The translations under genes were made by a program, and so were the position numbers. Under the pieces are notes generated by a model. That model saw only the letters and a program-made list of their open reading frames with translations, did no database searches and was not told where the DNA came from. From positions 124,001-188,000 of the IMG/VR virus record IMGVR_UViG_3300031951_000003: a DNA stretch of 64,000 bases, one strand, 5' to 3'. Positions 323 through 64,000 of the stretch are shown here, piece after piece; position 1 is the stretch's first letter; every line of letters begins with the position of its first letter.

Positions 323-1369
323 TTACAATTCAACCAAATTAAATAATTCTGGTTGATAAAGTAATTTGTTGAAACCGTCTTCAGAAATTTTGAATTTATT
401 TATACCCGACATCCCTTTCTTCTTTTTCAAAGATATGTCAATTTTTTTTGTTTCCCTATCAAAACCATCGATTCTAAAAATTAAATCCGACCCTTTTGGT
501 ATTTCATACCATATACCGATTTTATGTTTTTTTGTAACCCTATCAATCATATCCATAAAGGTGTTAGAATCACCTGATTCATAATCTTCTTCAATTCTCT
601 CCAAAATTTTTTCCAACGACCTATTTGCTTCTTTATTAAAACTTTCATTGTCGAATACATCATCATCTTGATATTCAAACCTATCTTCATCCCATCCACC
701 AATTGTTCTATTGGAATCTTGGAATATAGTTTTCAGTAATTTTTTGATTGACACGTGTGGAACATTATATTGAATGAAATTTGATATTAAATCACCCACA
801 GTTGTTTTGATTCCATCTCCATGTCTCTGAAAACCAAAATCCCCTAAAAAATTATTCAATTCCGAATTTACATGTTCAGATGCAACGTGTCTTATTTCAA
901 TATTTTTTTCGTGGGTCCAATCAATCACTATTGAGCCAATCTCTCGGGGATAATACTTTTCTAAAAACACTGCAAAACCAGCTCTGTCTTCTTCATCCTC
1001 GTAGTCAAATTTTTTACTATATATAAGTTTGGATATTCTTTGTAAAAGTTCTTTATTATCTGAATCGAAATTGTACCAAGGACCATACCCGTCTAAAAAA
1101 TCTTGTTCGGATGCACTTGAATCTTGAATATCGTAAGTATTGTACGGATTGTTAATTGCCTGTTCGAACCAAATATCATCATCATCCAAACCAATAATTT
1201 TTCCAAACTCATTCATGTCTGTGAATTCTATAATAACTTTTGACAAAGCAGGATTTTCCCTACTCGCAATAACTCTTCCAATGGACTTATCCGCCCCTTC
1301 CAATTCATACTGATTAATTTTTCCTTTTACAAATTTTCTTAAAGCAAAAAAACTATCTCCTGGTTCCAT
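323..1369 (-). CDS. Hypothetical acidic phage protein
   Basis: 348-aa ORF; TATTTATA 4 nt upstream of ATG. Confidence 0.7.
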   Translation of the reverse strand: MEPGDSFFALRKFVKGKINQYELEGADKSIGRVIASRENPALSKVIIEFTDMNEFGKIIGLDDDDIWFEQAINNPYNTYDIQDSSASEQDFLDGYGPWYNFDSDNKELLQRISKLIYSKKFDYEDEEDRAGFAVFLEKYYPREIGSIVIDWTHEKNIEIRHVASEHVNSELNNFLGDFGFQRHGDGIKTTVGDLISNFIQYNVPHVSIKKLLKTIFQDSNRTIGGWDEDRFEYQDDDVFDNESFNKEANRSLEKILERIEEDYESGDSNTFMDMIDRVTKKHKIGIWYEIPKGSDLIFRIDGFDRETKKIDISLKKKKGMSGINKFKISEDGFNKLLYQPELFNLVEL

Positions 1370-1413
1370 ATCGTATAAATAGACTTTTAATTTGGAAATT
1401 TAATATTTATGTA

Positions 1414-1436
1414 TATCTTTGTTGTGTTCTTTGAAA
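1414..1436 (+). promoter_or_regulatory. Bacteroidota-type -7 promoter (TATCTTTG) and boxA-like GTTCTTTGAAA upstream of tmRNA
   Basis: Matches TAnnTTTG; the same boxA-like word precedes tRNA-Glu at 13458-13468. Confidence 0.6.
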
Positions 1437-1441
1437 ATATT

Positions 1442-1834
1442 GGGGAAGTCATGGCAATTGATTGGCGTGTGTAGTTATAGGTGGCACGTAGGAGCTGAGT
1501 TAACTCCTTTATCAACTGATTTGAAAAAACAAATGGCAATACTTTTGCTAAGATGGCTGCTATCGGTTTAATCGCTGAAGAAGCTACTGTTGTTGCTTAA
1601 TTTAAGTCACGACACTCGGGTCGGTTAGGACATTAACCTAGGAACAGAAGTCCAATATACGGGTCACAGGTCAGAGCTCGTTTAAAATAATTCTGAGACC
1701 AAGTTGTTTGTAGGTGGGTTTCTCACATATATCAAACCTAATATTTCGGAACATTGAGAAACAATGTTGTAATAAACGTGTAGTCACTTATAGTTGTCGC
1801 GAACAAGACACGGGTTCGACTCCCGTCTTCTCCA
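1442..1834 (+). ncRNA. ssrA: tmRNA; tag reading frame 1535-1600 (A)GNTFAKMAAIGLIAEEATVVA*
   Basis: Acceptor GGGGAAG/CTTCTCC-A with G3.U70; T-arm GACACGGGTTCGACTCCCGTC; internal Ala-rich tag ORF. Confidence 0.93.
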
Positions 1835-1843
1835 CAGCAGATT

Positions 1844-1871
1844 AACCCCGAGAAACTCTCGGGGTTTTTTA
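1844..1871 (+). terminator. Intrinsic terminator after tmRNA
   Basis: AACCCCGAGA-aac-TCTCGGGGTT + T run. Confidence 0.85.
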
Positions 1872-2014: not shown

Positions 2015-2032
2015 CGTCCTCGGGATTTTTTT
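1999..2032 (+). terminator. Terminator-like hairpin in 5' leader of TonB-dependent receptor
   Basis: AATCCCG...CGGGATT followed by T run, ~30 nt before the ATG. Confidence 0.55.
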
Positions 2033-2059
2033 ATTTATAAACCAATAAACAAAAAAGCA

Positions 2060-5000
2060 ATGAAAAAAGCAATCTTGATGTCACTTTTAACCTTATTCGT
2101 GACAATCACATCTTTCGGGCAGATTACAACTTCTTCCCTGTCAGGTGTAGTTAAAAATGAAAAAGGTGAGACTTTGGTAGGTGCTACAGTTCATGCGGTA
2201 CACCAACCAACAGGTTCAGAATACCGTGCAACCACAAACAAAACGGGTGTCTACTCAATTCCGGCTGTACGTGTAGGAGGACCTTATCTTATTCACGTTA
2301 GTTACGTAGGCTACAGAAAAGCTGAACTAACTGACATCAACACTCTTCTTGGGGTTACAAGTAATGTTGACGTAACTCTTATTTCTGAATCAAAAGAGTT
2401 GAAAGAAGTTACTATTGTTGGAACGAGAAACAATTTATTCTCAAAAGACAAAACAGGGGCAGCTCAACAATTCGGACGTAGAGAACTAACTACAATTCCA
2501 ATTACGGGTGCAAGAACAATTGACGGAATTACCAAATACAATCCTTTTGGTGATGGTCGTTCTTTTGGAGCACAGGATTCTCGATTGAATAATTTTACAA
2601 TCGACGGTTCTCAGTTCAACAACAACTTCGGTTTGGGTTCATCAGCGGCTGCTGGTGGTAGAACAGGTGCTTCAGCAATTTCTTTGGATGCGATTGACCA
2701 ATTACAGGTGAACGTCGCTCCTTTTGACATTCGTCAAAGTGGTTTCGTGGGTGCAGGTATTAACGCTGTTACTCGTTCTGGAACTAACGAAATTGAAGGA
2801 AGTGTTTATCAAACACAAAGAAACAATTCAAAAACTTATGTGGGAGACAACGCTAGAGGAACTACAGTAACTGCTCAGAAATTTGATGAAAAAGTTTTCG
2901 GTTTTAGATTGGGTGCACCAATCATCAAAAATAAATTATTCATTTTTGGAAACTATGAAAGCATCGTTAGAACTGAACCAGGCACAACTTGGATTTCTAC
3001 CGGTTCTCCTTTGACAGGTTCACAAGTAAGTCGTGTTAAATACGATGACATGGTGAGACTTTCGAAGTTCATGAGAGATACTTTAGGTTATGAAACAGGT
3101 CCTTTTGAAGGTTATTCTAACACAAACGATTCAAGAAAATTCATGACTCGTTTGGATTGGAACATTAGTCCAAAACACAAGTTAATGGCACGTTTTGTTA
3201 ATCACAACTCATCCGCTGAGATTAACATTTCTAACTCTCAGTCAGCGGGTGCTGGAAACAGAACTACTCAATTCAACGCAATGAGTTTCCAAAACAGTGG
3301 ATACATTATTATGGATAATACTCGTTCAGGTGTATTAGAATTGAATTCTAAGTTTTCAAACACACTCCACAACAATTTGATTATCTCTTATGACAAACAA
3401 ATTGAAGACAGAGCTTACATGAGTCAAATGTTCCCAACAATTGACATCAGAGAAGGTTCAGCAACTTACACTTCTGTAGGTTTTGACCCATTCACACCAG
3501 GAAATAAATTGAACTATTGGACATTCAACGTTACTAACAACGTTACAAAATATTTGGAAAAACACACTTTGGTGGGTGGTTTCAACTATCAAATGTACCA
3601 ATCAAACAATTTATTCTTCCCAGCTTCGAACGGTGTATATATTTTCAACAGTTTGAATGACTTCTACACTGCAGCTAAACAATCAGTTGCTAATAATGGA
3701 GGACCTTCAGCTTTCGCACCAGCGAGATTTCAGTTTCGTTATTCTGCTTTACCTGGAGCGGTTGAACCAATGCAGGTATTGGAAGCTAATCGTTTAGACC
3801 TTTATGTTCAAGACGAGTATAACCTTACTAAGAATTTAAAATTAACAACGGGATTGAGAGCGAACGTAATTTCACTTGGAAATACAGCTCTTGAAAATCC
3901 TGCAATCACATCAATGACATTTGGTGGTGGTGAAAAATTAAACACGAGCGTGATGCCGAAAACACAATTGTTATTCGAACCACGTTTCGGTTTCAACTAT
4001 GATTTAAAAGGTGAAAAGAAAACTCAAATTAGAGGTGGTACAGGTATTTTCACAGGTAGACCTCCATTTGTTTTCTTATCAAACCAAATCGGAAATAACG
4101 GTGTATTAACAGGATTTATCGATGTATCAGGTGCTCAAGCATCACAATACGGATTTACTACAAATCCTAATCAATATTTTATTCCTCAAACACCAACATT
4201 ACCTTCAACTTTTGATTTAGCTTTCACTGACGCAAATTACAAGTTCCCTCAAGTATGGAGAAGTAATTTAGCAATCGACCAAAAACTACCTTGGTTGGGT
4301 TTAGTGGCAAGTGCTGAAGTTCTTTACAATAAGACAATAAACGCAGTTCATTACTACAACGCAAACCAAGATGTTCCTGTAGGAACTTTAGGTGGTCCTG
4401 ACAAAAGAGCATTGTTTGCAAATACTGACCCTGGTGTTAGAGTAAATGATAATGTTTCTATGGCAGCAGTTTTAACAAACAAACAAGGTGCTTACAACAA
4501 GTCTCTTACATTGAAATTAGAAAAACCAATTTCGAAAGGAGTTTGGGGTTATGCAGCTTGGACTACATCAAGAGCTGAAGATTACATGAGTGCTGGTTCA
4601 ATCGCGAGTGGTTCATGGCAATCAGCTCGTTCTATCAACGGAAACAACGATTTACAACTTTCTACTTCAGACTTTGTTGTTAGGAATAGAATCGTAGGTT
4701 TATTAGGTTATAGATTTGATTATGGTAAGAAATACGGTGGAGCAACTACAATCACTATTGGTTACGTAGGTGCTCAAAATAACCCATTCTCTTACACTGT
4801 AGCGGGTGACCTTAACGGTGATAGAGTTAGAGACAACGAACTTATGTTTGTACCTGTAAATGGTTCTGACATTCGTTTCTCAACTTTAACAGTAGGTACA
4901 AGAACTTATACAGAAGCTGAACAACAAGCGGCTTTCGAATCATTTATTTCTCAAGATGACTACCTTTCTACAAGAAGAGGTCAGTACGCTGAAAGAAACG

Positions 5001-5335
5001 CTTCTTTCCTTCCTTGGTTACACAGATTTGACCTTTCAGTGGCTCAAGATGTGTTCATAAAAATCAAAGGAAAAAGAAACACTTTCCAAATCAGAGCTGA
5101 CATCCTTAACTTCGGAAACATGGTTAATAACAAGTGGGGTGTTTCTCAAAGAGCGGCAGTTCCTCAGTTGTTAAACTTTGTAAGTAGAGACGCGAACAAT
5201 GTTCCTTCTTACAGACTTTCAACTCAAATTCTTGATGGACAAACAGTATTGGCAAAACAAACTTACCAATTCAACTCATCAGTATTTGACGTATGGAGTG
5301 CACAGTTAGGTATTAGATATACTTTCGGTAAGTAA
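2060..5335 (+). CDS. TonB-dependent outer-membrane receptor (Oar-like; carboxypeptidase-regulatory N-domain, plug, beta-barrel)
   Basis: Signal peptide; LSGVV..E.LVGATV N-domain; NNFTIDG and GAGINAVTRSGTN plug motifs; C-terminal QLGIRYTF. Confidence 0.92.
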   Translation: MKKAILMSLLTLFVTITSFGQITTSSLSGVVKNEKGETLVGATVHAVHQPTGSEYRATTNKTGVYSIPAVRVGGPYLIHVSYVGYRKAELTDINTLLGVTSNVDVTLISESKELKEVTIVGTRNNLFSKDKTGAAQQFGRRELTTIPITGARTIDGITKYNPFGDGRSFGAQDSRLNNFTIDGSQFNNNFGLGSSAAAGGRTGASAISLDAIDQLQVNVAPFDIRQSGFVGAGINAVTRSGTNEIEGSVYQTQRNNSKTYVGDNARGTTVTAQKFDEKVFGFRLGAPIIKNKLFIFGNYESIVRTEPGTTWISTGSPLTGSQVSRVKYDDMVRLSKFMRDTLGYETGPFEGYSNTNDSRKFMTRLDWNISPKHKLMARFVNHNSSAEINISNSQSAGAGNRTTQFNAMSFQNSGYIIMDNTRSGVLELNSKFSNTLHNNLIISYDKQIEDRAYMSQMFPTIDIREGSATYTSVGFDPFTPGNKLNYWTFNVTNNVTKYLEKHTLVGGFNYQMYQSNNLFFPASNGVYIFNSLNDFYTAAKQSVANNGGPSAFAPARFQFRYSALPGAVEPMQVLEANRLDLYVQDEYNLTKNLKLTTGLRANVISLGNTALENPAITSMTFGGGEKLNTSVMPKTQLLFEPRFGFNYDLKGEKKTQIRGGTGIFTGRPPFVFLSNQIGNNGVLTGFIDVSGAQASQYGFTTNPNQYFIPQTPTLPSTFDLAFTDANYKFPQVWRSNLAIDQKLPWLGLVASAEVLYNKTINAVHYYNANQDVPVGTLGGPDKRALFANTDPGVRVNDNVSMAAVLTNKQGAYNKSLTLKLEKPISKGVWGYAAWTTSRAEDYMSAGSIASGSWQSARSINGNNDLQLSTSDFVVRNRIVGLLGYRFDYGKKYGGATTITIGYVGAQNNPFSYTVAGDLNGDRVRDNELMFVPVNGSDIRFSTLTVGTRTYTEAEQQAAFESFISQDDYLSTRRGQYAERNASFLPWLHRFDLSVAQDVFIKIKGKRNTFQIRADILNFGNMVNNKWGVSQRAAVPQLLNFVSRDANNVPSYRLSTQILDGQTVLAKQTYQFNSSVFDVWSAQLGIRYTFGK

Positions 5336-5764: not shown

Positions 5765-5780
5765 TTGGTATTTATACCAT

Positions 5781-9322: not shown

Positions 9323-9369
9323 ACCGAGATATCTCGGTTTTTTTTATTTTAAATGTATTTATAGTATCT

Positions 9370-10888: not shown

Positions 10889-10989
10889 TTTCTTTTTGTT
10901 TTTTTTGTTAATGTTTTAATAACGTCTTGAGTTTATAAATATAGAAAAGTTTTTCAGAATCGTCAATTAGCAGTGTAAACTTTTTTTTG

Positions 10990-14917: not shown

Positions 14918-14930
14918 GATAATATAAATA

Positions 14931-18141: not shown

Positions 18142-18177
18142 ATTGATAAATACACCGTTTTTTTAATATTTATGTAA

Positions 18178-26609: not shown

Positions 26610-26647
26610 AAGATTTTTCTTTATAAATATTACGATATTCCCTATTT

Positions 26648-26953: not shown

Positions 26954-27001
26954 TCAAATAAATATTTTTGTATTCGATAAAAAAACTCTACTTTTGCAAA
27001 C

Positions 27002-27831: not shown

Positions 27832-27945
27832 AATTTGTTTTTATAAGAAATATTATAAAATCACATAAAAGTCATTCCTTGAAATTTTATTTTACCATTT
27901 TTTTTAACTGTATTTATTGTTATAATTTATTATAAAAACTTTAAG

Positions 27946-31764: not shown

Positions 31765-31845
31765 AAAAAGATATTTTCAATAAATACCACAGAATTTTTA
31801 AATTTTAGATTTTACTTGATAAACTCCTTCTATTAATATTGTTTG

Positions 31846-34881: not shown

Positions 34882-34914
34882 AACAATAAATATAACACGA
34901 GTATTTATAATTGT

Positions 34915-35538
34915 ATGGAGTTTATTTTAACAGAATCACAATTGTTGAGAATTATCAAAGAGAATAAATCCGAAGGTGATTTAACCAATTCACTTAAGAG
35001 GATGTCTTCCTTTATGAACAATTTCGTTAATAGAATTGGAAAAAGTTATGGTTTGAATTTGAGAATGTTCCTTACGTGGGGAACTTCAATTGCGGGTTTA
35101 GTTATGCCCTTGGATGAATTTTTGAAAACAGGTAACTTTGGATTGACAGAAAGTCAGAGATATTTGGTTTTAGCTGGTGTGGCATTTCTTATATTTTTTG
35201 AAGGAAAAAGAGGAATGATTAAACTTTTAAATAAAATCAAAGAGCAGGGGTTGGAGGAAGTTTTTGATACCACTCTAATGAAAGGTTATGAACTTAAAGA
35301 TTCATTCGTTGGATTCCTACGTTCTTTTAGAATTATATCGAGTCAGGTATTAGAAATCATTTCATATGCCTTTCTTATTCCAATAATTGTGGATATTCAA
35401 AATTATTCTACTGACTCTGTAAATTTATCTGAAACAGCATTAATGATTGCTGAAAGACTTGTTGCCTCAGGTGCAATTCTACTTTCCAAAGAATTTTTAT
35501 TCGAACTTATTCGAAAATTAATTAAGAAATTTCAATAA
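34915..35538 (+). CDS. Hypothetical membrane-associated (putative virion) protein
   Basis: MEFILTESQLLRIIKE N-terminus; TATTTATA upstream. Confidence 0.65.
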   Translation: MEFILTESQLLRIIKENKSEGDLTNSLKRMSSFMNNFVNRIGKSYGLNLRMFLTWGTSIAGLVMPLDEFLKTGNFGLTESQRYLVLAGVAFLIFFEGKRGMIKLLNKIKEQGLEEVFDTTLMKGYELKDSFVGFLRSFRIISSQVLEIISYAFLIPIIVDIQNYSTDSVNLSETALMIAERLVASGAILLSKEFLFELIRKLIKKFQ

Positions 35539-36867: not shown

Positions 36868-37301
36868 TAATAAATACCACGGAAAGGGATTGATAAACCA
36901 ACACCATATCTCACACCTTTCATGTAATTAACACCCAAAGACAAGTCAATTCCTTTATTGGTCTTGGTAAGGATTCTTATGGGGTGAATTTTGAGCCAAA
37001 TATCAGGTTTGATTGATACACTATCGTAATAAGATTCACCGAAAATACCACCCATAATTGATATCTGATGATTTGTTAAACTTAGACCCACACGATTAAT
37101 TCGAGACATTGGGGTTGTATATATGTATGGTGCGGGGAAGGTCGCAACAAGATAACCACCAACATAGAATCCGACTCCGTTGAAATTATTGTGATAGGTC
37201 ACAACCAATGTTTTTTGGTCGGGAACATACATAACATCACTCGTTTGTCCTTTACATAGAATCGTGATAAATAAAAATATAGAAGTAATTATTGTTTTCA
37301 T
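36867..37301 (-). CDS. Secreted/outer-membrane beta-rich protein
   Basis: Signal peptide; alternating G/aromatic beta strands. Confidence 0.6.
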   Translation of the reverse strand: MKTIITSIFLFITILCKGQTSDVMYVPDQKTLVVTYHNNFNGVGFYVGGYLVATFPAPYIYTTPMSRINRVGLSLTNHQISIMGGIFGESYYDSVSIKPDIWLKIHPIRILTKTNKGIDLSLGVNYMKGVRYGVGLSIPFRGIY

Positions 37302-39260: not shown

Positions 39261-39318
39261 AATTAAGACCCACATAACTGTGGGTTTTTTAATACTCCAT
39301 TCATGGTATTTATAACAT

Positions 39319-41559: not shown

Positions 41560-42666
41560 TTAAGAATTTGGTTTTAGAACTGCCAACACTTCAGGAAATT
41601 CTTTATCAAGAACTTTTTCATTTTTCCCTTCGTATGGTATGTTTTGTAGAACATATCTAATGGCATTTAATCCAGACACTCTTTTGTCTTCAGCATCAAT
41701 TATAACCCAAGGGTGATTAAGTGTGGATGTTTTATCGAACAATTTTTCTTTGAACTCTGTGAATCTATCCCACAAGTCTTGCATTTTTGAGTCGTTAGGT
41801 GAGTATTTCCAATATTTGAGAGGAGATTGTTGTCTCATTTTGAATCTTCTTGCTTGAGTGTCTTTGTCGATTGAAAACCAAAGTTTGAATAAATAATCTC
41901 CGTCTTTTACCAAATCATTCTCAAAATCGGCTACATTCTCCATAAAATCTTCATACTCTTCAGGGTTTCCATATCCCATAACAGGTTCTATTAATCCTCT
42001 ATTATACCAACTTCTGTCAAACAAGTTAATCATTCCTGGTCTGATTTGTTTTCTGTAACGATTCCACCAATCCTTTCTATCTTCAGGTGTCGGAACTCCT
42101 AAAGCAATTACATTATAGTATCTTGGATTTAAATTTTCGACAAATTTTTTGATTGTTGCACCTTTACCTGCGGAATCTCTACCTTCGAAAACTATAATCA
42201 CTGTCTTTCCTGTGTGTTTCAACCATTCCTGTAGTTTCAATAATTCAACTTGTAATTCATAAAGCTCCTTCCTGAAAACCTTTTTTGGTATAATTGAAGG
42301 CTCTTCAATTTCGAACTCATAGTCTTCACTTTCAGGTTCTATGCCATATCCACTTCTATCTCTGTATCTGAGAGATGAGATTATTTTACCGAGGTAGTCC
42401 TCAACATTTTTTTTCTTGTCCCCTTTTTTCAACAAAACTTTTCTTAGTCCACGATTCATCATATCAAAATCAATAATTTGTTTGGTCGCAAATTTTGATA
42501 TATCAATTAACATTCTTACAACTTTCGGGCTAAATAATTTCAAAAATTGGAGTGTCTCCACGAATGATTTCAGGTTCACATTCATCTTTGCTCCCTCCAA
42601 TGAATTTTCTTCATTTACAACACCCATCAAAGATTTAAACCTATCTATTTCTGACAATAATTTCAT
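41560..42666 (-). CDS. ppk2: Polyphosphate kinase 2 with ~125-aa N-terminal extension
   Basis: LQVELLKLQ, FEGRDSAGKG, FDRSWYNR, K.WK.SP.D, PWVII...DKR. Confidence 0.93.
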   Translation of the reverse strand: MKLLSEIDRFKSLMGVVNEENSLEGAKMNVNLKSFVETLQFLKLFSPKVVRMLIDISKFATKQIIDFDMMNRGLRKVLLKKGDKKKNVEDYLGKIISSLRYRDRSGYGIEPESEDYEFEIEEPSIIPKKVFRKELYELQVELLKLQEWLKHTGKTVIIVFEGRDSAGKGATIKKFVENLNPRYYNVIALGVPTPEDRKDWWNRYRKQIRPGMINLFDRSWYNRGLIEPVMGYGNPEEYEDFMENVADFENDLVKDGDYLFKLWFSIDKDTQARRFKMRQQSPLKYWKYSPNDSKMQDLWDRFTEFKEKLFDKTSTLNHPWVIIDAEDKRVSGLNAIRYVLQNIPYEGKNEKVLDKEFPEVLAVLKPNS

Positions 42667-42736
42667 GTAAAGTTTATTATAAATACTCCATAAGATGTAG
42701 TTTGAAAGTATTTATTGATACCAAGATACTATCGAT

Positions 42737-49589: not shown

Positions 49590-49617
49590 AATAATATTTA
49601 TTGTAAAGTAAATTACT

Positions 49618-53608: not shown

Positions 53609-53648
53609 AGAGGTGAGATAATTCTCACCTTTTTTTGTATTTATATGT

Positions 53649-54480: not shown

Positions 54481-55848
54481 TTATTTGTTCATAGCAAAAT
54501 AATCGTCGGGTAAAGTTTTTCCTAAAACTTTTTCCAAAGCCCTTATTTCTTTTTCTGAATACTTAGCTTTTTTTTCTTCATCCGACAAAGGTAAATCAAC
54601 TTCTTTGTCTGTTCTTAGATAATTCTGATTGAAACTTTTGGATTCTTTGTTATTTTGTTCGGAAAAATATAAAAATTCATAAGGGTTTTTTCTTCTTCTA
54701 ACACCTGGCTCAGGAAGTCTTCCTGGAAATACAGAGAGATAAGGGATTTTCAGACTCTTAACAAAAGCACTTTTGGCTTTACCTTCTCCATTTTTAACTT
54801 GAACTAATCTGAATCCGTCAATAAATTTTGCTGTCATATCAACACCAAATACCATATCAATTACATTACCCCATGTAGAATATTTCTTTATTTCAGTAAC
54901 TTTAGTTGGAGCATTTTGGATTAAATCAACAAAGTTTTTTTCAGCCGTCTCACCAAGTGTTGTAGTAAATTTCAGTTTTCTTTTCATATCCTGAAAATCT
55001 TTCTCTTTTTCTTCATGAAATTTTTCCAATAAATCCACATGAGCCATACTGATTGACTTTATGTCGACATTTTTTTCTTTCATCATTCTATCCAAAATAG
55101 GTTGCCATTTTTTAGGTAGAGCAGATTCGAGTCTTTTTGGGGTGAAATATAATTCGATAACTTTAATGTCCGAACCCATAGGTAAGTCTCCACCTTCTTG
55201 TCTTTTTGTTATTTCGTCCGCCCAAAATGTGTAGTTTGTATCTACATGGTTCAGAATACTCCAATCATCCTCTTCGATGAGTCCAAACCAATTTTCATTT
55301 TCCAACTTATTTTTTAGTTCGGTTATTTTCTCACCGATGGTCATAGCAGGGCCTTCTACCCATTTTACAAAATTATTTTTCCAAGGTTCAACATCTTTTT
55401 CGAAACGATTTAATAAAATTAGATTTTGTTTGAACCATCCTTTCCCTGGCTTTCCTATTCTCATATTAAATTTGGGATTAAAAGCTTGGTTAAAGAAAAC
55501 TGAGAGATTTGTTTGTATTAAATCTAAATAAGCCTTTCTTCCTAATTCTGTAATTTTGTTTTGTTGGTCTTTTGGTGGATTGAAAAAATTCTGCTTTGTC
55601 CTCATCATTTTTCCAGACATTGTATTTGTAGAAGTTTTTCTCCTCTGTATTTCATTTTTCAAAAAATCTTCGAAAAAAACATACTCGTCATCTTCAATTG
55701 GTATTTTGAGTTGTAACTTTGCTTGAATATTCTTCAATCTATTACCTACCTCGGGGTCATCTGTATCACCAACCCATCTTCGGATTTTTGTTTCGAGTTC
55801 TTTCCTGTCAACTTCTTCCCTTAGTAATTTTTTAATCAAATCTCTCAT
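54481..55848 (-). CDS. Hypothetical protein, possible PD-(D/E)xK-like C-domain
   Basis: MRDLIKKLLREE start; GE.AE...D...GVD.....VQVK. Confidence 0.6.
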   Translation of the reverse strand: MRDLIKKLLREEVDRKELETKIRRWVGDTDDPEVGNRLKNIQAKLQLKIPIEDDEYVFFEDFLKNEIQRRKTSTNTMSGKMMRTKQNFFNPPKDQQNKITELGRKAYLDLIQTNLSVFFNQAFNPKFNMRIGKPGKGWFKQNLILLNRFEKDVEPWKNNFVKWVEGPAMTIGEKITELKNKLENENWFGLIEEDDWSILNHVDTNYTFWADEITKRQEGGDLPMGSDIKVIELYFTPKRLESALPKKWQPILDRMMKEKNVDIKSISMAHVDLLEKFHEEKEKDFQDMKRKLKFTTTLGETAEKNFVDLIQNAPTKVTEIKKYSTWGNVIDMVFGVDMTAKFIDGFRLVQVKNGEGKAKSAFVKSLKIPYLSVFPGRLPEPGVRRRKNPYEFLYFSEQNNKESKSFNQNYLRTDKEVDLPLSDEEKKAKYSEKEIRALEKVLGKTLPDDYFAMNK

Positions 55849-55871
55849 ATATGAATAAATAGTAAATAAAA

Positions 55872-56879: not shown

Positions 56880-56913
56880 CCTTTATAAATATTCTATCAA
56901 ACTAAAATTATTT

Positions 56914-57480: not shown

Positions 57481-57503
57481 GTAAATAAATAGAACAAGAG
57501 TAT

Positions 57504-57812: not shown

Positions 57813-57888
57813 TGTTTTACAAAGATAAGAAAGATAAAATTAAATTCCAAATCTTTTCAAAAGATTCAGATAAAATCTGAAAATTTCG

Positions 57889-57977
57889 TGGTTGGGAGTG
57901 GAGTCGAACCACTGGCACACGGCTTTCATACCGCTGCTCTACCTTAAACCCCGAAGAGTTACTGAGCTACCTCAACC
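57889..57977 (-). ncRNA. Aberrant tRNA-like RNA (Phe-like) with UUCG hairpin in the D-loop and 6-nt anticodon loop
   Basis: GGTTG(A)GG/CCCAACC acceptor; GCTC/GAGC D-stem; GCGGT-ATGAAA-GCCGT; AGTGG-TTCGACT-CCACT. Confidence 0.7.
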
Positions 57978-58140
57978 AATTGTCTTACAAAAATAATAAA
58001 TCTTTATTAGACCACCAACATTTGTAAGAACTTTTTTTTTGAATTTGAATACCGAGTGTCTTTCATCGCCTATAAGTTTCAAACTCATTACAAAATTAAA
58101 GAATCTTTTTCAATCGGTCAAATTTTTGATATTTATTTTT

Positions 58141-58779
58141 ATGAAAAATTTGATATTATTTCCGATTCTTTGTTTGAGTTTTATTTTCTCAAACGCTCAA
58201 GACACTGTAAGAATAAAACACACAAACTATACTACAGTATTTTCTAAATCTAAAAAATATCCGGTTCTTGTTGAATGGTGGGTTACAAAAAAAATGGTTG
58301 ATTGCCCGACACCACTCAAAAGGAAGGATAATTTCAAACCTGACCCAAAGTTAGTTGTTGATACTGACATTTCCAAAGATTATGTTGGTAGTGGTTTTGA
58401 CAGGGGTCATATGATGCCAGCTGCGGACAATTTATGTCAAACTCAACAAGTCCAAGATGAATGTTTTTATTTTTCCAACATGTCCGCACAATATCACAGC
58501 CTTAATGCTGGAGATTGGAAATCTCTTGAAACCTTGGTTCGTGACGAGGCAAAAACTCAGGATTCAATAAAGGTGTGGTGTGGTAATATCGGTGAAATTC
58601 AAAAAATTGGAAAGGTTTCGGTTCCTAAACAATGCTGGAAGGTCATTTACATTAAAAAGCAGAACGTTTGGAAGTCTTACCTGTTCGAAAACGATAAGTC
58701 AAAACCTGATGGAATCAAAAATAATGAAGTAACTTTATCTGTGATAGAAAAATTAACAGGGCTCAAGTTCAAATTATAG
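58141..58779 (+). CDS. Secreted DNA/RNA non-specific endonuclease (NucA/EndoG family)
   Basis: Signal peptide; R..NFKPD, GFDRGHM.PA, F..SNM.AQ...LN...W..LE. Confidence 0.9.
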   Translation: MKNLILFPILCLSFIFSNAQDTVRIKHTNYTTVFSKSKKYPVLVEWWVTKKMVDCPTPLKRKDNFKPDPKLVVDTDISKDYVGSGFDRGHMMPAADNLCQTQQVQDECFYFSNMSAQYHSLNAGDWKSLETLVRDEAKTQDSIKVWCGNIGEIQKIGKVSVPKQCWKVIYIKKQNVWKSYLFENDKSKPDGIKNNEVTLSVIEKLTGLKFKL

Positions 58780-59463: not shown

Positions 59464-59519
59464 AAAAACAAAATTACGAATAAAAGTTGAACTACGAACA
59501 TTTATGATATTTATTTTTT

Positions 59520-60704
59520 ATGGGAAGAATTGTCAAATTGAAAGAATCAGACTTAGTTAATATCATTAATAAAATAATGAACGAACAAAAAGTCACTTCA
59601 CAAATCATCAAACCGAGATATGGTGTTGACCCATCTACAGCACCCTCGGATTATTTAGGGAAAGGCAGACAATTTGAAAAAGAATCTAAGTTCAAAAAAC
59701 TAACGGATTTTTCAAATTATGAAAATATGGTGAGTAAAATACCTAATATGGAATGCTTACCAAACAATCAAATGAGATATTTCGTTTTATTCGTTACAGC
59801 AAAGAAAAAAGACTTAATGAAAGATTTAGGAGTCGATGAAAAAACACTGAGTTATTTAACCAAAATTGCCATCGCAATTATGGGTTGGCAGTCTGATTTT
59901 GGTAAAACGGACAAACTCTATGATATTAAGCCTATTGCAAAATACATAAACCCTTGGGATGTTTATAACACAGTAGACGGAATTCTAAAAAATATTGTTG
60001 GTAGTGGGACAGCAGCAAAAGGGACTGAATGGCTTGCTAAAAAATTTGGTGTTGATGAGCCATCTTTTGGTCCTGCGGAATTCATGCCATCAACATTTGC
60101 CAAAACGGGTGTTGAAAAAAAATATGGTAAGGGTATGGAAACTGTTATTGGGTCAGGTCTTGCAGTGATATACAACATGTTGTCAAAATACAGACAAGCA
60201 GAAAAAAATGGGTTGAGTAGTCAACCCTCAGTAAATCAAATTGCAAAAACTAAGGGTATTTATGGGTGGGTAGGTAATATTGGGACAGGAAATCATTTAT
60301 GGGATGTGGCAATAGCATCTCACACTTATCCAGATGAAAAAATTTTAGTAAAATATTGTGCAACTAACAGACCCGATTTCATGGCGCCTTGTTCAAATAG
60401 TACTTATGAACCATTCAGTTCTGATTCAGCTTGGCAATCTTTCAGAAAACATAAGTGGAACCAAATTTATTATGGTAAAAATAAAAATTTGGATGTTTTT
60501 CCAGGTAAATTGACTGTAAATCGCGGACAACAAATTCCCAACTATTTACCTTACCTAACAGGAACTCATGGAACAATATCGGGTCAAGAAGAAGGGATAA
60601 TGGACAATTTGCGTTTAATTAGTAGAACTAACGACCGTATAAATCAATTCAAGTGTGTGGACGATGCAATTAGAACTAACGTTTCCTATCCTAAATTTTC
60701 TTAA
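59520..60704 (+). CDS. Putative virion protein, lysozyme/SLT-like (paralog of 62891-63835)
   Basis: VKLKESDL..II..IMNEQ N-terminus; shares SFGPAEF and GTGN..WDVAIASH blocks with paralog. Confidence 0.6.
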   Translation: MGRIVKLKESDLVNIINKIMNEQKVTSQIIKPRYGVDPSTAPSDYLGKGRQFEKESKFKKLTDFSNYENMVSKIPNMECLPNNQMRYFVLFVTAKKKDLMKDLGVDEKTLSYLTKIAIAIMGWQSDFGKTDKLYDIKPIAKYINPWDVYNTVDGILKNIVGSGTAAKGTEWLAKKFGVDEPSFGPAEFMPSTFAKTGVEKKYGKGMETVIGSGLAVIYNMLSKYRQAEKNGLSSQPSVNQIAKTKGIYGWVGNIGTGNHLWDVAIASHTYPDEKILVKYCATNRPDFMAPCSNSTYEPFSSDSAWQSFRKHKWNQIYYGKNKNLDVFPGKLTVNRGQQIPNYLPYLTGTHGTISGQEEGIMDNLRLISRTNDRINQFKCVDDAIRTNVSYPKFS

Positions 60705-60998: not shown

Positions 60999-61034
60999 AT
61001 AAATATACGTCTATTTATTTGTAAAATCAAAGAC

Positions 61035-61492: not shown

Positions 61493-61794
61493 ATTCCCTT
61501 ATTCAATCTTAGAATGAGTTCTGAATTTTCTTTCTGTAGATAATCAACTTTCACTGCAAGTGCTGAAACTTGTTCTGTCAATTTTAAGATTGTTGCTCTC
61601 ATCTCATCTTTTTCCTTGGAGGAATTTTCCAACAAAACTTCTAACTTTGCAATTCTATCTTTACAATCATGACGAATAAATTCTTCATCTCTTTCTTTCC
61701 TCATGGCTCTTTTCTCATAGAATCTCCATGCACTTGCTGAACCTAATACGGTTACAACCGTAATTAATACTGTATATAATGATTGTGTTTCCAT
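61489..61794 (-). CDS. N-terminal TM plus coiled-coil protein (possible lysis accessory)
   Basis: TM helix then heptad repeats. Confidence 0.6.
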   Translation of the reverse strand: METQSLYTVLITVVTVLGSASAWRFYEKRAMRKERDEEFIRHDCKDRIAKLEVLLENSSKEKDEMRATILKLTEQVSALAVKVDYLQKENSELILRLNKGI

Positions 61795-61795
61795 T

Positions 61796-62845
61796 TTACG
61801 CTTTTGCTGGTCTTGCCCAAACTATGTTAAATTCACCTCCCATTTGGGATAAAGGTGTTGCTTTTAATGTGTCGGTCACGTAGTGATAAATGATTGGTTC
61901 TCCTGATGGTGTTTTTCCCCCAACAAAACCTAAGTGAGTGTTGAAACCAAAACGTTCTCCCTTCTTTGTTAAAGTATCACCTGGAACAAATTTCAATTTT
62001 TTTCCCATATCACTTGGCTGCCAAGCTCTTATTTTTCCACCTTCCAAAACACCAAAGAAAGGACCATTGGTTGCTCTTTCTCCTTTTGATGTTAATCCCG
62101 TTGCCCCATAAAAGAAAGCTTCTCCTGTGTGTGATGAACCAGGATAATAAATTCCAACAACATCTCCCAAATCTAAGTCGCTAAAAGAAGACTGAGATGG
62201 AACAGCTTGTGAAATTAAGGACTTAATTCTACCGAATTGACCTGATGAATTAATTTGATTTTCACTTAAGCCTTTCGAATTTTGGTTGATTTGTGAAAAA
62301 ATGTCAGCCATTTCATTGAGATTACCTCCTTTGAATATTTTACTAAACCCATCTCCTTTGTTTGGAAATGAATTAGACAATCTGTATGCATGCCACGCAT
62401 TACCCTGTCTTACACCCGTCTGACTTGCAACATATTGAGAGCATCCTATTGGACCTTTTTTTGCAACATTTTCCTTTCCTTTACAAACATCGTTCAAAGT
62501 ATCTTTAACGGTGGGGTATAATACATATCTACCACAACGTTTGGTCAACCCACTATCACTAGGAACAGTTCCTTCTTGATTTCCCTCAAAATATGGTATT
62601 CCTAATTTTTTTGACGTATAAGGACCTAATACCCCCTTACCGTTACCTCCATTTTTTAATTGGAAATCCTTTATTGCAATTTTTGTCAATTTTCCTATAA
62701 TCCCATCAACTCCATCCCTATTTGGACCAGATTTCCCTAAGTTGTATCCTAATTCCTTAAGTTTTGTTTGAGCGGCTTTAACGAAATCAGTGTAAGATTC
62801 GTATTGTTCGAGAATGACTCTCATTTTATTTCTTAAATTTTTCAT
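61796..62845 (-). CDS. PG-binding-domain protein with putative CHAP/NlpC-like Cys-His catalytic domain
   Basis: AQ.KL..LGY.LG..GVDG.IG..T..AIK.FQ; GCSQYV..GNAW; THLGFV; IYH. Confidence 0.65.
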   Translation of the reverse strand: MKNLRNKMRVILEQYESYTDFVKAAQTKLKELGYNLGKSGPNRDGVDGIIGKLTKIAIKDFQLKNGGNGKGVLGPYTSKKLGIPYFEGNQEGTVPSDSGLTKRCGRYVLYPTVKDTLNDVCKGKENVAKKGPIGCSQYVASQTGVRQGNAWHAYRLSNSFPNKGDGFSKIFKGGNLNEMADIFSQINQNSKGLSENQINSSGQFGRIKSLISQAVPSQSSFSDLDLGDVVGIYYPGSSHTGEAFFYGATGLTSKGERATNGPFFGVLEGGKIRAWQPSDMGKKLKFVPGDTLTKKGERFGFNTHLGFVGGKTPSGEPIIYHYVTDTLKATPLSQMGGEFNIVWARPAKA

Positions 62846-62890
62846 ACTTTAATAAATATGTTTTTATTTCTATTCTACCATCAGTTTTAT

Positions 62891-63835
62891 TTAAAACTTC
62901 AAACAACCAAAACTATTCATGTATCTTACTACTTTTTCCAAGTAACCAATACTTGTTTGTTGACCCGAACCTTTGTTTGGAAAATAATTGGCAATTGGTT
63001 TGTTTTGTAAAACCATAATTTTCAGTTCAGGTTTAGATTGTGGAAAGGGTTGATATAACGTTTTGTCACACGGTGCAGCATAATTCGGGTCTTTTGTTTC
63101 ACACCATCTAGTGATTAGACCTGGCATGTTGTGTGCAACTATTGCTAAATCCATTGCGTTGTTACCTGTCCCATCAATTCCCTTGATACCCTTAGTTCTA
63201 ACTGCAATCGGATTAACGGATGGACCTGTTCCATTACCTACTTTTAAGGCTCTTTTGTAATCATCATTGATTCTGTGTAATGTCCCTATTCCTTGTTTCA
63301 AAGAACTGAAAGAATCTGAATAGGAACCAACTTTTTTATCTAAACCATAATCATTCCAAGTTTTTTCGGTAAATTGTGCTGAACCCAAACTCATTTGTTT
63401 CTGAGGTTTACCTGAAATTTTATTCACCAAATTTAACCCACCCACAGCGGATTTTGGGAGAAATCCAAACCCTATCGAATGTAAAAATTCTGCCGCGTCA
63501 TCACTCCATTCACTATAAGTACGGAATAAAGTTTCCCTTCCAATAATTCCGATTGCGGCTTTGGCCATGAAAAGCAGTGTATTAGCATCAACCCCAAGTT
63601 CACTCATCAATTTTTGTTTGTTTTGAACTACGTATTCTGCAAATGGTCTTACGTCCTCGGGAATACACGGGTATTTCTTCTCTAAACTGATATTTTCATT
63701 TTGTTTACTGACTCTTGCGTTTTCACGTGAATTATCTAGCCCAAATGAAGTTATTCCTGGTCCTGTTTGTTCTTTAAGAATTCGTAAGATAATATTCTCT
63801 AAATCCGTCTCAGTTAATTTGATACTTTTTTTCAT
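62891..63835 (-). CDS. Putative virion protein with lytic-transglycosylase-like motifs
   Basis: IKLTETDLENII.RILKEQ N-terminus; GIIGRET, SLGSAQF, AIVAHN, YLEKV. Confidence 0.6.
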   Translation of the reverse strand: MKKSIKLTETDLENIILRILKEQTGPGITSFGLDNSRENARVSKQNENISLEKKYPCIPEDVRPFAEYVVQNKQKLMSELGVDANTLLFMAKAAIGIIGRETLFRTYSEWSDDAAEFLHSIGFGFLPKSAVGGLNLVNKISGKPQKQMSLGSAQFTEKTWNDYGLDKKVGSYSDSFSSLKQGIGTLHRINDDYKRALKVGNGTGPSVNPIAVRTKGIKGIDGTGNNAMDLAIVAHNMPGLITRWCETKDPNYAAPCDKTLYQPFPQSKPELKIMVLQNKPIANYFPNKGSGQQTSIGYLEKVVRYMNSFGCLKF

Positions 63836-64000
63836 TATGAAATAAATATCCACCAAAAATGACTTTTAGTGATGAGGGAAATAATTATTATTCTTTCAGA
63901 ATAATAATAAGAATTAATAAAAATAAAAAAAAAAGAAAAAAAACTAGTAATACTAGTTCTAGGGATTTTAGCAAACCGCCACACAAGAATCGAAACCTAA

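What the first reader, a model, noticed from the sequence alone, without database searches (positions are those of the whole stretch)
323..63850. TATTTAT(A) motif just before many genes whose products begin with L/I-x-E-rich helices: candidate late promoter plus capsid-targeting propeptide
Seen: TATTTAT lies a few nt before the ATG at 1369, 5781, 9370, 14917, 18141, 31764, 34915, 39319, 42666, 53649, 55848, 56879, 59520, 60998, 62845 and 63835. This class is distinct from TAnnTTTG genes. Many of these proteins start with MKFISILLKE, MEFILTESQLLRIIKE, MRDLIKKLLREE, VKLKESDL..IMNEQ or IKLTETDL..ILKEQ. Known: T4 prohead protease cuts after L/I-x-E in internal proteins. The motif is the reverse complement of the T4 late promoter TATAAATA. 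Inference: near-leaderless late transcripts encode a large set of head-packaged, injected proteins.
Basis: partly seen in the sequence, partly recalled or inferred. Interest (0 to 1): 0.6.

Follow-up and report, generated by a model that had tools for sequence, protein, structure and literature searches.

The report
Phage late promoter and cargo leader tags
A 321-kb freshwater phage related to T4 starts about 100 genes from one short DNA signal (TATTTAT), often so close to the start codon that the mRNA should have almost no leader, and about 43 of those genes make unrelated enzymes that share short N-terminal tags resembling the signals T4 uses to pack proteins into its head.

Summary
In the whole 321-kb phage genome, TATTTAT occurs 195 times. 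Of these, 139 lie in the 9% of the DNA that is intergenic, and 57-59 lie exactly 4-6 nt before an ATG that opens a long ORF. Same-composition 7-mers give a median of 3.

TATTTAT precedes the head and tail genes. It often sits directly after a terminator. It is also found before structural genes of two distant cultured relatives, Flavobacterium phage immuto and Microcystis phage Mel-JY01, which share a divergent sigma-like gene with this phage. I read it as the late promoter, giving leaderless or near-leaderless mRNAs for about 57 genes.

Separately, about 43 proteins carry one of 3-4 conserved N-terminal helix tags. The tags occur only at residues 1-30, are fused to unrelated bodies (PPK2, YkuD, C39 peptidase, glucosaminidase, PG-binding domains), and end in [LIVM]-x-E followed by a variable linker. 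The phage has a T4-type head: Gp23 capsid protein, S77 prohead protease and T4 portal. Its capsid protein has an I-N-E|A site that I aligned by eye to the T4 gp23 cleavage site.

Head targeting and cleavage are well motivated but not shown. I rate this a new variant of a known kind.

The parts
1375..1381 (-). TATTTAT, 5 nt before ATG 1369 (348-aa ORF, no Pfam family)
2032..2038 (+). TATTTAT directly after a hairpin+T-run, 21 nt before ATG 2060 (1091-aa CarboxypepD_reg + outer-membrane beta-barrel protein with signal peptide; untagged)
5769..5775 (+). TATTTAT, 5 nt before ATG 5781 (493 aa, MKFISILLKE; borderline tag; paralogs of g314 and g328)
9356..9362 (+). TATTTAT a few nt after a terminator hairpin and T-run, 7 nt before ATG 9370 (Peptidase_M23 protein)
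14924..14930 (-). TATTTAT, 6 nt before ATG 14917 (234 aa, DUF6878)
18146..18152 (-). TATTTAT, 4 nt before ATG 18141 (222 aa); a second copy on the + strand lies at 18167-18173
26623..26629 (-). TATTTAT, 13 nt before ATG 26609 (283 aa)
26958..26964 (-). TATTTAT, 4 nt before ATG 26953 (101 aa)
27911..27917 (+). TATTTAT, 28 nt before ATG 27946 (198 aa)
31780..31786 (-). TATTTAT, 15 nt before ATG 31764 (410 aa)
34886..34908 (.). Back-to-back divergent pair inside a 33-nt intergenic gap: TATTTAT (-) at 34886-34892, 4 nt before ATG 34881; TATTTAT (+) at 34902-34908, 6 nt before ATG 34915
34915..34962 (+). Class T1 tag MEFILTESQLLRIIKE (ends I-K-E) on a 207-aa protein
36870..36876 (-). TATTTAT, 5 nt before ATG 36864 (194 aa)
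39307..39313 (+). TATTTAT after a terminator hairpin, 5 nt before ATG 39319 (255 aa, MSLLNEILDKY)
42679..42685 (-). TATTTAT, 12 nt before ATG 42666 (PPK2 gene). The motif is kept in nearly all orthologous loci examined (absent upstream in one) while the flanks and the spacing diverge
42610..42666 (-). Class T2 tag MKLLSEIDRFKSLMG + VNE on the PPK2 protein. A [LIVM]-x-E is present at residues 18-21 in 26 of 26 orthologs, followed by an indel-rich linker
49595..49601 (+). TATTTAT, 16 nt before ATG 49618 (279 aa)
53638..53644 (+). TATTTAT 1 nt after a terminator T-run, 4 nt before ATG 53649 (206 aa)
55855..55861 (-). TATTTAT, 6 nt before ATG 55848 (455 aa)
55813..55848 (-). Class T4 tag MRDLIKKLLREE (L-R-E)
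56885..56891 (-). TATTTAT, 5 nt before ATG 56879 (335 aa, Laminin_G_3; PHROG virion structural / tail-fibre-like; untagged)
57485..57491 (-). TATTTAT after a terminator, 4 nt before ATG 57480 (188 aa)
58130..58136 (+). TATTTAT, 4 nt before ATG 58141 (212-aa Endonuclease_NS with signal peptide; untagged)
59508..59514 (+). TATTTAT, 5 nt before ATG 59520 (394 aa)
59520..59585 (+). Class T3 tag MGRIVKLKESDLVNIINKIMNE|Q
60999..61018 (.).
62852..62858 (-). TATTTAT, 6 nt before ATG 62845 (349 aa, MKNLRNKMRVILEQ then PG_binding_1; borderline tag)
63842..63848 (-). TATTTAT, 6 nt before ATG 63835 (314 aa)
63770..63835 (-). Class T3 tag MKKSIKLTETDLENIILRILKE|Q

Best explanation
Two linked but separable features.

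(1) Late promoter. TATTTAT(A/T), usually preceded by A or G, is the core -10/-7-type element of this phage's late promoter. It needs no conserved -35 element. It is most likely read by host RNA polymerase carrying a phage-encoded sigma factor. The best candidate is the divergent, gp55-like sigma encoded at genome 93769-94515, outside the window. About 104 genes have their own copy. In about 57 of them the motif ends 4-6 nt before the ATG. With the promoter geometry known for Bacteroidota, transcription should then start at or within a base or two of the A of AUG, giving leaderless mRNAs. The other motif-bearing genes, including most head and tail genes, have A-rich leaders of 12-50 nt.

(2) Cargo tags. 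About 43 late proteins (5-8 in the window) begin with one of 3-4 conserved 12-22-residue helical tags:
- MKYIITESQLKxxxEQ
- MNLxENIxRIKExMG + [ILV]xE
- (K)KxxKLTESDLxxIVxxVIKEQ
- MRxLIKKxLRE

The tags are joined by a variable linker to unrelated bodies. They most likely act like T4 capsid-targeting sequences. They would dock cargo into the scaffold core of the T4-type prohead and then be cut off after [LIVM]-x-E by the S77 prohead protease, leaving a large and varied set of enzymes inside the head to leave with the DNA.

Shown here: motif statistics, conservation of the motif, the gene classes it precedes, the modularity of the tags, and the T4-type head genes. Inferred: the TSS position, which sigma reads the motif, packaging, cleavage and ejection.
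For: Promoter.
- Intergenic density is 25-fold that of coding DNA, and the spacing peak is sharp.
- Thirteen sites sit no more than 10 nt after a strong hairpin+T-run, which leaves no room for any other promoter.
- Divergent pairs lie inside intergenic gaps of about 33 nt.
- No -35 element is conserved.
- The motif precedes the protease, portal, scaffold-position, sheath, tube and large tail genes.
- It is kept upstream of the PPK2 ortholog in nearly all of the related loci examined (63-89% protein identity) while the flanks diverge. The same 4-6 nt peak appears across 76 related loci: 159 sites, against 2-8 for non-overlapping control 7-mers.
- The same motif precedes TerL, portal, sheath, tube, hub and tape-measure genes in Flavobacterium phage immuto, at about 13-28 nt. 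It precedes TerL, portal and tube in Microcystis phage Mel-JY01, at about 30-36 nt with GGAG in between.

Sigma.
- g079 is the only genome match of T4 gp55 (E=0.002) and of phrog_234. Its only PDB match is gp55.
- Its family profile hits SigA region 2 (E=0.002) and gp55 (E=0.055).
- The AF2 model has pLDDT 90, and almost all Foldseek top matches are sigma factors.
- immuto has a full-length homolog (E=1e-34) and no canonical Sigma70_r2 match. Mel-JY01 also has a homolog.

Leaderless reading.
- The F. johnsoniae -7 element lies 4-5 nt from the TSS (PMC6847099).
- The base before the ATG is a pyrimidine in 76% of the 4-7 nt class.
- The start codon at 4-6 nt is ATG 59 times, TTG once and GTG never.

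Tags.
- They occur at residues 1-30 only.
- 43 of 51 bodies have no BLASTP match to another body in the set.
- The bodies carry diverse Pfam domains.
- Synonymous codons vary at invariant residues, and conservation stops right after E-Q.
- 41 of 43 tagged proteins have [LIVM]-x-E at residues 10-32, against 41% of other proteins, and 26 of 26 PPK2 orthologs have it.
- 33 of 43 have their own TATTTAT, and 8 more lie just downstream in such units.
- The tags recur with TATTTAT in distant relatives.
- The AF2 model of the PPK2 protein shows a helix at residues 3-13, a low-confidence linker, and a body from residue 30.

Head.
- Gp23, Peptidase_S77 and Portal_T4 are present.
- The capsid protein N-terminus, aligned by eye with the T4 gp23 propeptide recalled from memory, places LINE60|A at the T4 cut site.
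- For T4, the rule L/I-X-E and the 10-residue targeting sequence on diverse internal proteins are established (PMC9026906; PMC3012670).
Against: - There is no TSS mapping. The only RNA run is held as low-depth contigs that stop 29 nt inside one gene and do not bridge the promoter. That is compatible with the model but not decisive.
- With strict T4 geometry (8-mer at -13 to -6), a 4-nt spacing would put the TSS inside the start codon.
- The gp55 similarity of g079 is weak, and g079 has a sigma-4-like domain that gp55 lacks.
- A second, canonical sigma-70 gene exists (g345) and could read the motif instead.
- The tags have no sequence similarity to the T4 sequence MKTYQEFIAE.
- [LIVM]-x-E is common in K/E-rich helices: 41% of untagged N-termini have one.
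- Several cargo domains act on peptidoglycan, which fits other destinations as well.
- The specific tags are at best faint in immuto and absent from the part of Mel-JY01 that I examined.
- No virion proteome exists for this phage.
Confidence: 0.55

Rival explanations
1. TATTTAT is a signal in the mRNA, such as a ribosome-recruiting or stabilising AU-rich element occupying the Shine-Dalgarno position. The true promoters would lie further upstream.
For: The motif ends 4-6 nt before the AUG, where an SD would sit. Bacteroidota do not use SD pairing (PMC6847099), so another element is conceivable.
Against: - Thirteen sites follow a strong terminator within 10 nt, so a transcript from upstream would have ended.
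- Divergent pairs share 33-nt gaps.
- Spacing in orthologs and in distant relatives ranges from 4 to 36 nt, and in Mel-JY01 a GGAG lies between the motif and the ATG.
- Known Bacteroidota initiation determinants are A-rich, not T-rich.
Confidence: 0.04
2. TATTTAT(W) is a weak variant of the host sigma-A -7 element TAnnTTTG and is read by the unmodified host holoenzyme. No phage sigma or temporal class would be involved.
For: TATTTATW matches TAnnTnTn, and the distance to the ATG fits the host 4-5 nt geometry.
Against: - It lacks the near-invariant T-7 and G-5 of host promoters.
- Genes with good TTTG-N19-TAnnTTTG promoters form a separate set; only 3 genes have both motifs.
- The motif marks structural genes.
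- It is conserved in a phage of a cyanobacterium, whose sigma-A differs, and it co-occurs with the g079 sigma family.
Confidence: 0.08
3. The N-terminal tags are a real modular signal, but not for head packaging. They could direct late proteins to another destination or partner, such as the tail or baseplate, the membrane or cell envelope, a phage-made compartment, a chaperone, or an oligomerising helix. Cleavage would not be required.
For: - Many bodies act on the cell wall: YkuD, glucosaminidase, and PG_binding_1 in three proteins.
- There are 3-4 distinct tag classes, which could mean several destinations.
- There is no similarity to the T4 targeting sequence.
- No packaging evidence exists.
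Against: - The tags are not hydrophobic or Sec/Tat-like. Truly secreted late proteins here have ordinary signal peptides instead.
- Conservation stops exactly after [LIVM]-x-E and is followed by an indel-rich linker, the anatomy of a removable propeptide.
- An S77 protease and an MCP site I-N-E|A, aligned by eye to the T4 cut site, are present.
- One tagged protein has a sub-threshold phiKZ_IP match, E=0.0013.
Confidence: 0.3
4. The shared N-termini are only the conserved remnant of one fast-evolving paralog family, or a by-product of nucleotide constraints on the 5' end of leaderless mRNAs.
For: Many tagged genes are clustered at genome 196-225 kb, and 25 of 43 are of the leaderless type.
Against: - The bodies belong to unrelated Pfam families, and 43 of 51 have no BLASTP match to another body in the set.
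- Eighteen tagged genes are leadered or internal to an operon.
- Invariant residues use 2-5 synonymous codons.
- 34 leaderless-type genes have no tag.
Confidence: 0.03

Closest known systems
Bacteriophage T4 late transcription (promoter TATAAATA at -10, sigma gp55, co-activator gp33, clamp gp45)
   Same: A short AT-only -10-type element with no -35 element, on the coding strand. It drives head and tail genes in a phage with a T4-type head. It shares 6 of 8 positions with the T4 motif in the same orientation. A phage-encoded sigma-like protein is present whose only PDB single-sequence match is gp55.
   Different: - The core is TATTTAT(A/T), not TATAAATA.
- The candidate sigma is 248 aa with sigma-2 and sigma-4-like domains. 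Its profile matches SigA region 2 better than gp55.
- gp33 and gp45 dependence was not examined.
- In about 57 genes the element abuts the ATG, whereas T4 late mRNAs have SD-bearing leaders (my own knowledge).
T4 capsid-targeting sequence on internal proteins IPI-III and Alt, and the polymorphic ip loci of T-even phages
   Same: A short conserved N-terminal leader on otherwise unrelated, non-essential-looking late proteins. It ends in a hydrophobic-x-Glu site of the kind cut by the S77 prohead protease, and the genes are clustered and variable (PMC9026906, PMC3012670, PMC12373910).
   Different: - There is no sequence similarity to MKTYQEFIAE.
- The tags are 12-22 residues long, not 10.
- There are 3-4 tag classes instead of one.
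- About 43 genes (12% of the gene set) are involved, against 3 in T4 and about 10 known across T-evens.
- The bodies include recognisable enzymes (PPK2, YkuD, C39 peptidase, glucosaminidase, a phosphatase-like domain) rather than small restriction inhibitors.
- Packaging has not been shown.
Propeptide-bearing inner-body and ejection proteins of giant phages (phiKZ, 201phi2-1, SPN3US)
   Same: A jumbo phage with an S77-family protease and many candidate head-internal proteins processed after Glu (PMC9026906). One tagged protein has a weak phiKZ_IP match.
   Different: Those phages cut at S/A/G-x-E, and their propeptides are long and not a shared short tag. This phage has a T4-type Gp23 capsid protein and a T4-like L/I-x-E context.
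Bacteroidota sigma-A promoters (TTTG at -33, TAnnTTTG at -7) and leadered, SD-less mRNAs
   Same: The geometry of a -7 element 4-5 nt from the TSS. A separate set of about 10-15 phage genes has good TTTG-N19-TAnnTTTG promoters, presumably early genes.
   Different: TATTTAT lacks T-7 and G-5. In F. johnsoniae, 87% of transcripts have leaders longer than 10 nt, so a block of about 57 leaderless-type genes is atypical for the presumed host phylum.

Membership tests
T4-type late promoter / gp55 system | -10-only AT-rich 8-mer on the non-template strand, with no -35 element | tested here: met
   Only the motif and its -1 purine are conserved. Terminators abut it.
T4-type late promoter / gp55 system | Consensus TATAAATA | tested here: not met
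   The consensus is (A/G)TATTTAT(A/T), which matches at 6 of 8 positions. The ATAAATA orientation shows no positional signal.
T4-type late promoter / gp55 system | Drives the structural (late) genes | tested here: met
   The protease, portal, scaffold-position, sheath, tube and large tail genes carry it. The same holds in immuto and Mel-JY01.
T4-type late promoter / gp55 system | gp55-family sigma encoded by the phage | tested here: inconclusive
   g079 gives gp55 E=0.002 (genome), 0.15 (PDB) and 0.055 (profile), but SigA region 2 scores better (0.002). Foldseek top matches are almost all sigma factors at E>=0.02.
T4-type late promoter / gp55 system | Dependence on the gp33 co-activator and the gp45 clamp | not tested
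   No search was made for gp33 or gp45 homologs. Dependence needs biochemistry.
T4 capsid-targeting sequence / internal proteins | A short conserved N-terminal leader on otherwise unrelated proteins | tested here: met
   The tags occur at residues 1-30 only. 43 of 51 bodies have no BLASTP match to another body in the set, and their Pfam domains are diverse.
T4 capsid-targeting sequence / internal proteins | The leader ends at an L/I-x-E site for the prohead protease | tested here: met
   41 of 43 tags and 26 of 26 PPK2 orthologs have it. Conservation stops after the Glu. This is sequence evidence only; cleavage is not shown.
T4 capsid-targeting sequence / internal proteins | Homology to the T4 sequence (MKTYQEFIAE) | tested here: not met
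   The tag consensus sequences show no resemblance to it beyond the initial M-K.
T4 capsid-targeting sequence / internal proteins | Peptidase_S77 protease and Gp23/gp20-type head encoded | tested here: met
   PF03420 1e-21, PF07068 4e-71, PF07230 4e-76.
T4 capsid-targeting sequence / internal proteins | Proteins present in the mature head, processed, and ejected with the DNA | not testable with these tools
   This is an uncultured metagenomic phage with no proteome.
Leaderless mRNA | Transcription starts at, or within a few nt of, the AUG | tested here: inconclusive
   The geometry fits. The RNA contigs are too thin and are not raw reads.
Leaderless mRNA | AUG start codon | tested here: met
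   59 ATG, 1 TTG and 0 GTG at a spacing of 4-6 nt.
Bacteroidota sigma-A promoter | TAnnTTTG with near-invariant T-7 and G-5 | tested here: not met
   TATTTAT(W) has A at -7 and A/T at -5. The TAnnTTTG genes are a separate set.

The most novel reading that the evidence does not exclude
A widespread freshwater jumbo phage of Bacteroidota devotes about 12% of its genes to a polymorphic arsenal of enzymes: polyphosphate kinase 2, an L,D-transpeptidase, a C39-type protease, a glucosaminidase, a phosphatase-like protein and many unknowns. These are loaded into a T4-type head through three or four interchangeable cleavable leader tags and delivered with the DNA. The whole set is expressed from leaderless late mRNAs made by a previously undescribed gp55-like sigma that reads TATTTATA, a system shared with phages of Flavobacterium and Microcystis.
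Probability: 0.35. Interest if true: 0.8.

Novelty: new variant of a known kind. Interest (0 to 1): 0.62.

Why it matters
If correct, this would be the largest and most varied set of candidate capsid-delivered proteins defined by a simple sequence rule, in a phage lineage present in many lake metagenomes (19 DNA runs hold half or more of the probe, and the 20 holder runs including one RNA run come from 15 studies).

- The tag rule could be used to predict injected effectors in uncultured phages.
- It would extend T4's late-promoter and targeting-sequence logic to a deep branch infecting Bacteroidota and cyanobacteria.
- It offers a compact, portable late promoter and packaging tag for engineering Bacteroidota phages.
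- A block of about 57 leaderless-type genes in a phylum whose own mRNAs are mostly leadered makes a testable case for how SD-independent ribosomes handle leaderless messages.
- The cultured phage immuto shares the promoter and the sigma, so the transcription part can be tested directly.

Tried and rejected
- Searching 5.8 billion proteins with the first 40 residues of one tagged protein returned only the query's own protein and one other sequence identical over those residues. The region is too short for that database.
- The tag HMMs found only two faint matches in the 50 kb of immuto that I fetched, and none in the 50 kb of Mel-JY01. The specific tags are therefore not demonstrably shared with the cultured relatives.
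- phrog_12791 (sigma for late transcription) gave no match in the genome.
- PHROGs gave nothing for g079.
- Foldseek on the g079 model gave almost only sigma factors as top matches, but none at E<=0.001. Global TM-scores were low, which I attribute to two flexibly linked domains.
- The one metatranscriptome holding the region (X20) is stored as contigs of depth 2-4 over the genes. It could show neither starts nor strand.
- A genome-wide count of TAHHTTTG upstream of ORFs is no higher than its reverse complement. Only a subset that also has a -33 TTTG looks like real host-type promoters.
- I looked for an RNA family or a stable fold in the highly expressed gap 57594-57821 and found none.
- Complex prediction was not run, because no single binding partner for the tags could be named as likeliest.
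- Literature searches for TATTTAT or TATTTATA as a phage promoter found nothing relevant in the held library. This is not proof that it is undescribed.

Full report
**What the window is.** The window is bases 124001-188000 of a single 321,139-bp virus record with direct terminal repeats. CheckV rates it 100% complete, and its GC content is 35%.

- Nineteen DNA runs, labelled freshwater, lake-water and 'fungus' metagenomes, hold half or more of the 8-kb probe. With one RNA run, the 20 holders come from 15 studies.
- The head module lies outside the window at 103-113 kb. It is T4-type: Gp23 capsid protein (PF07068, 4e-71), Peptidase_S77 prohead protease (PF03420, 1e-21), Portal_T4 (4e-76) and TerL.
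- The nearest cultured relatives by capsid protein are Microcystis phage Mel-JY01 (42.5%), Flavobacterium phage immuto (41.6%) and Rhodothermus phage RM378 (36.8%).
- A subset of genes has good TTTG-N19-TAnnTTTG promoters. A 1091-aa late protein has the CarboxypepD_reg plus outer-membrane beta-barrel architecture. Both features point to a Bacteroidota host.

**Checking the observation.** All 16 sites exist.

- Thirteen have 4-7 nt between TATTTAT and the ATG.
- Two have 12 and 15 nt (starts 42666 and 31764).
- One start is misplaced: the ATG is at 60994, not 60998.

The window count is only 1.5 times the shuffle expectation (42 against 28.3, with 0 of 100 shuffles reaching 42). Position carries the signal:

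- Genome-wide, 139 of 195 sites lie in the 9% of the DNA that is intergenic, a 25-fold higher density.
- TATTTA is the most enriched upstream hexamer in an unbiased scan: 106 of 369 genes against 7.3 expected.
- 59 sites have an ATG opening at least 60 codons exactly 4-6 nt downstream. The other 20 permutations of the same letters give a median of 3.
- A second mode lies at 12-16 nt and is followed by an A-rich leader.
- The reverse complement shows no such pattern, so the signal is strand-specific.

**Why it is a promoter and not an mRNA signal.**

- Thirteen sites begin no more than 10 nt after a strong hairpin plus T-run. Eight of these are also 4-7 nt from the ATG, so nothing else can serve as the promoter.
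- Divergent pairs share gaps of about 33 nt, for example 34882-34914.
- Nothing upstream is conserved except a purine at -1 of the motif.
- In the related IMG/VR loci examined, whose PPK2 orthologs are 63-89% identical, the flanks are scrambled. (A/G)TATTTAT is retained in nearly all of them, at either about 4-9 or about 11-22 nt from the ATG.
- Across 76 such loci the 4-6 nt peak recurs: 159 sites against 2-8 for non-overlapping control 7-mers. These loci are related to one another, so they are not independent samples.

**Why it is the late class.** The motif precedes the protease, the portal, the scaffold-position gene that is followed by the capsid gene, the sheath, the tube and the giant tail genes, there with 13-49 nt leaders.

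- In phage immuto it precedes TerL, portal, sheath, tube, hub and tape-measure genes, about 13-28 nt from the ATG. TATTTA is present upstream of 17 of 53 genes, an 8.8-fold enrichment.
- In Mel-JY01 it precedes TerL, portal and tube at about 30-36 nt, with GGAG in between.
- The element therefore travels with the phage clade across host phyla. Its distance to the ATG is free. This argues against a translational role and against simple use of the host sigma-A.

**Which factor reads it.** Two sigma-like genes exist.

- g345 (291706-292503, minus strand) is a canonical Sigma70 with regions 2 and 4.
- g079 (93769-94515, plus strand) is the only genome match of T4 gp55 (E=0.002) and of phrog_234, and its only PDB match is gp55.
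- A 50-sequence profile of the g079 family hits SigA region 2 (E=0.002) and gp55 (0.055).
- The AF2 model of g079 has pLDDT 90. It gives almost only sigma factors as Foldseek top matches, though weakly.
- The family is very large: 8000 or more close sequences, and 1146 clusters at 50% identity.
- immuto has a full-length homolog (E=1e-34) and no Sigma70_r2 match. Mel-JY01 also has a homolog.

By co-occurrence in three lineages, g079 is the better candidate. This is inference.

**The leaderless reading.** In F. johnsoniae the -7 element lies 4-5 nt from the TSS, and 87% of leaders exceed 10 nt (PMC6847099).

- If TATTTAT(W) is treated as that 8-mer, spacings of 5-6 nt put +1 on the A of the ATG. 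A spacing of 4 nt needs a one-base shift.
- The base before the ATG is a pyrimidine in 76% of this class.
- The start codon is ATG 59 times, against 1 TTG and 0 GTG.
- RNA evidence is inadequate. Contigs of depth 2-4 end 29 nt inside gene 54481-55848 and resume 3 nt beyond the motif in the upstream gene's 3' end. None bridges the promoter.

**The N-terminal tags.** Clustering of the first 30 residues, followed by HMMs, defines four classes. T1 has about 15 members, T2 has 7, T3 about 15 and T4 about 6.

- Significant matches occur only at residues 1-30.
- After removal of the first 32 residues, 43 of 51 proteins have no BLASTP match to another in the set.
- The bodies include PPK2, PG_binding_1 (three proteins), YkuD, Peptidase_C39_2, Glucosaminidase, MORN repeats, weak DSPc and LRR matches, and a weak phiKZ_IP match.
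- Invariant residues use 2-5 synonymous codons, and conservation ends abruptly after E-Q. Selection therefore acts on the peptide and stops at a boundary.
- 41 of 43 tags have [LIVM]-x-E at residues 10-32, against 41% of other proteins. This comparison is partly circular.
- The cleaner test is the PPK2 orthologs. All 26 keep [LIVM]-x-E at residues 18-21, just after ...VMG. An indel-rich acidic linker follows, and then the conserved body.
- The AF2 model gives a helix at residues 3-13, low confidence to residue 29, and then a folded body.
- 33 of 43 tagged genes have their own TATTTAT, and 8 more lie just downstream in such units. Among untagged genes, 22% have their own motif.
- T1 and T3 tags with TATTTAT recur in relatives at 63-69% PPK2 identity.

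**Link to the head.**

- I aligned the capsid protein N-terminus (...WDKLGFLEG...SHLINE|ASSTSD...VRRVFSKLLANDIVSVQAMN) by eye with the T4 gp23 propeptide and its Glu-Ala cut, using the T4 sequence from memory. No alignment tool was run. This predicts cleavage after I-N-E60.
- T4 gp21 cuts after L/I-X-E, and the first 10 residues of IPIII suffice for packaging (PMC9026906).
- T-even internal proteins are diverse apart from that leader (PMC3012670; PMC12373910).
- The anatomy here matches that scheme. The tag sequences themselves do not, and nothing shows that these proteins are actually in virions.

The motif also drives untagged structural genes, an outer-membrane beta-barrel protein and a secreted Endonuclease_NS that has an ordinary signal peptide. 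Thirty-four leaderless-type genes have no tag. Promoter class and cargo class overlap, but they are not the same.

**Verdict.** My estimates for the separate claims:

| Claim | Probability |
|---|---|
| TATTTAT is a promoter | about 0.85 |
| It is the late class | about 0.8 |
| Transcripts are leaderless | about 0.65 |
| The tags are a modular signal | about 0.9 |
| The tags are cleaved head-targeting leaders | about 0.55 |

I rate this a new variant of known T4 principles, with an unusual scale and an unusual promoter placement.

Noticed in passing
window 10989-16972 (-), 37395-37483 (+), 1442-1837 (+): There are 24 tRNA genes, mostly in three minus-strand arrays, and a tmRNA with tag peptide AEEATVVA*.
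   Followed up: no
window 57594-57821: Metatranscriptome contigs of very high depth (437-930) but only about 90-93% identity lie on an ORF-poor 500-nt gap. There is no Rfam family and no excess fold stability. A sub-threshold tRNA-like hit lies at 57893-57952 (-). This may be an abundant small RNA shared with relatives.
   Followed up: partly
genome 291706-292503 (-) and 93769-94515 (+), outside the window: The phage encodes two sigma-like proteins. One is a canonical sigma-70 with regions 2 and 4. The other is divergent and gp55-like, from a very large family that JGI often names 'SprT family metalloprotease'.
   Followed up: partly
window 2060-5335 (+) and 58141-58779 (+): Two late-promoter genes encode a SusC/TonB-like outer-membrane beta-barrel protein (CarboxypepD_reg + OMP_b-brl_4) and a secreted DNA/RNA non-specific endonuclease. 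Both have ordinary signal peptides.
   Followed up: partly
window 41560-42666 (-): A phage polyphosphate kinase 2 (PF03976, 1e-70) has an extra N-terminal domain of about 100 residues. It is conserved in at least 80 related viral contigs.
   Followed up: partly
genome 105185-106759 (-), outside the window: The gene in the gp22 (scaffold) position, between the protease and the capsid gene, encodes a 525-aa protein with a run of about 240 residues that is almost entirely D/E/M, followed by a lysine-rich part.
   Followed up: no
genome 114569-115444 (-), head module, outside the window: A 292-aa head-module protein carries an internal stretch, KLSESQIDILVDRFVISEQ at residues 22-40, that resembles the T1/T3 tags by eye. 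The HMM did not score it.
   Followed up: no
genome 124325, 136423, 141465, 147363, 237332, 242848, 245319, 247287, 250499: About 10-15 genes have textbook Bacteroidota promoters (TTTG, then about 19 nt, then TAnnTTTG, then a 15-21 nt leader). These are presumably the early class read by host sigma-A.
   Followed up: partly
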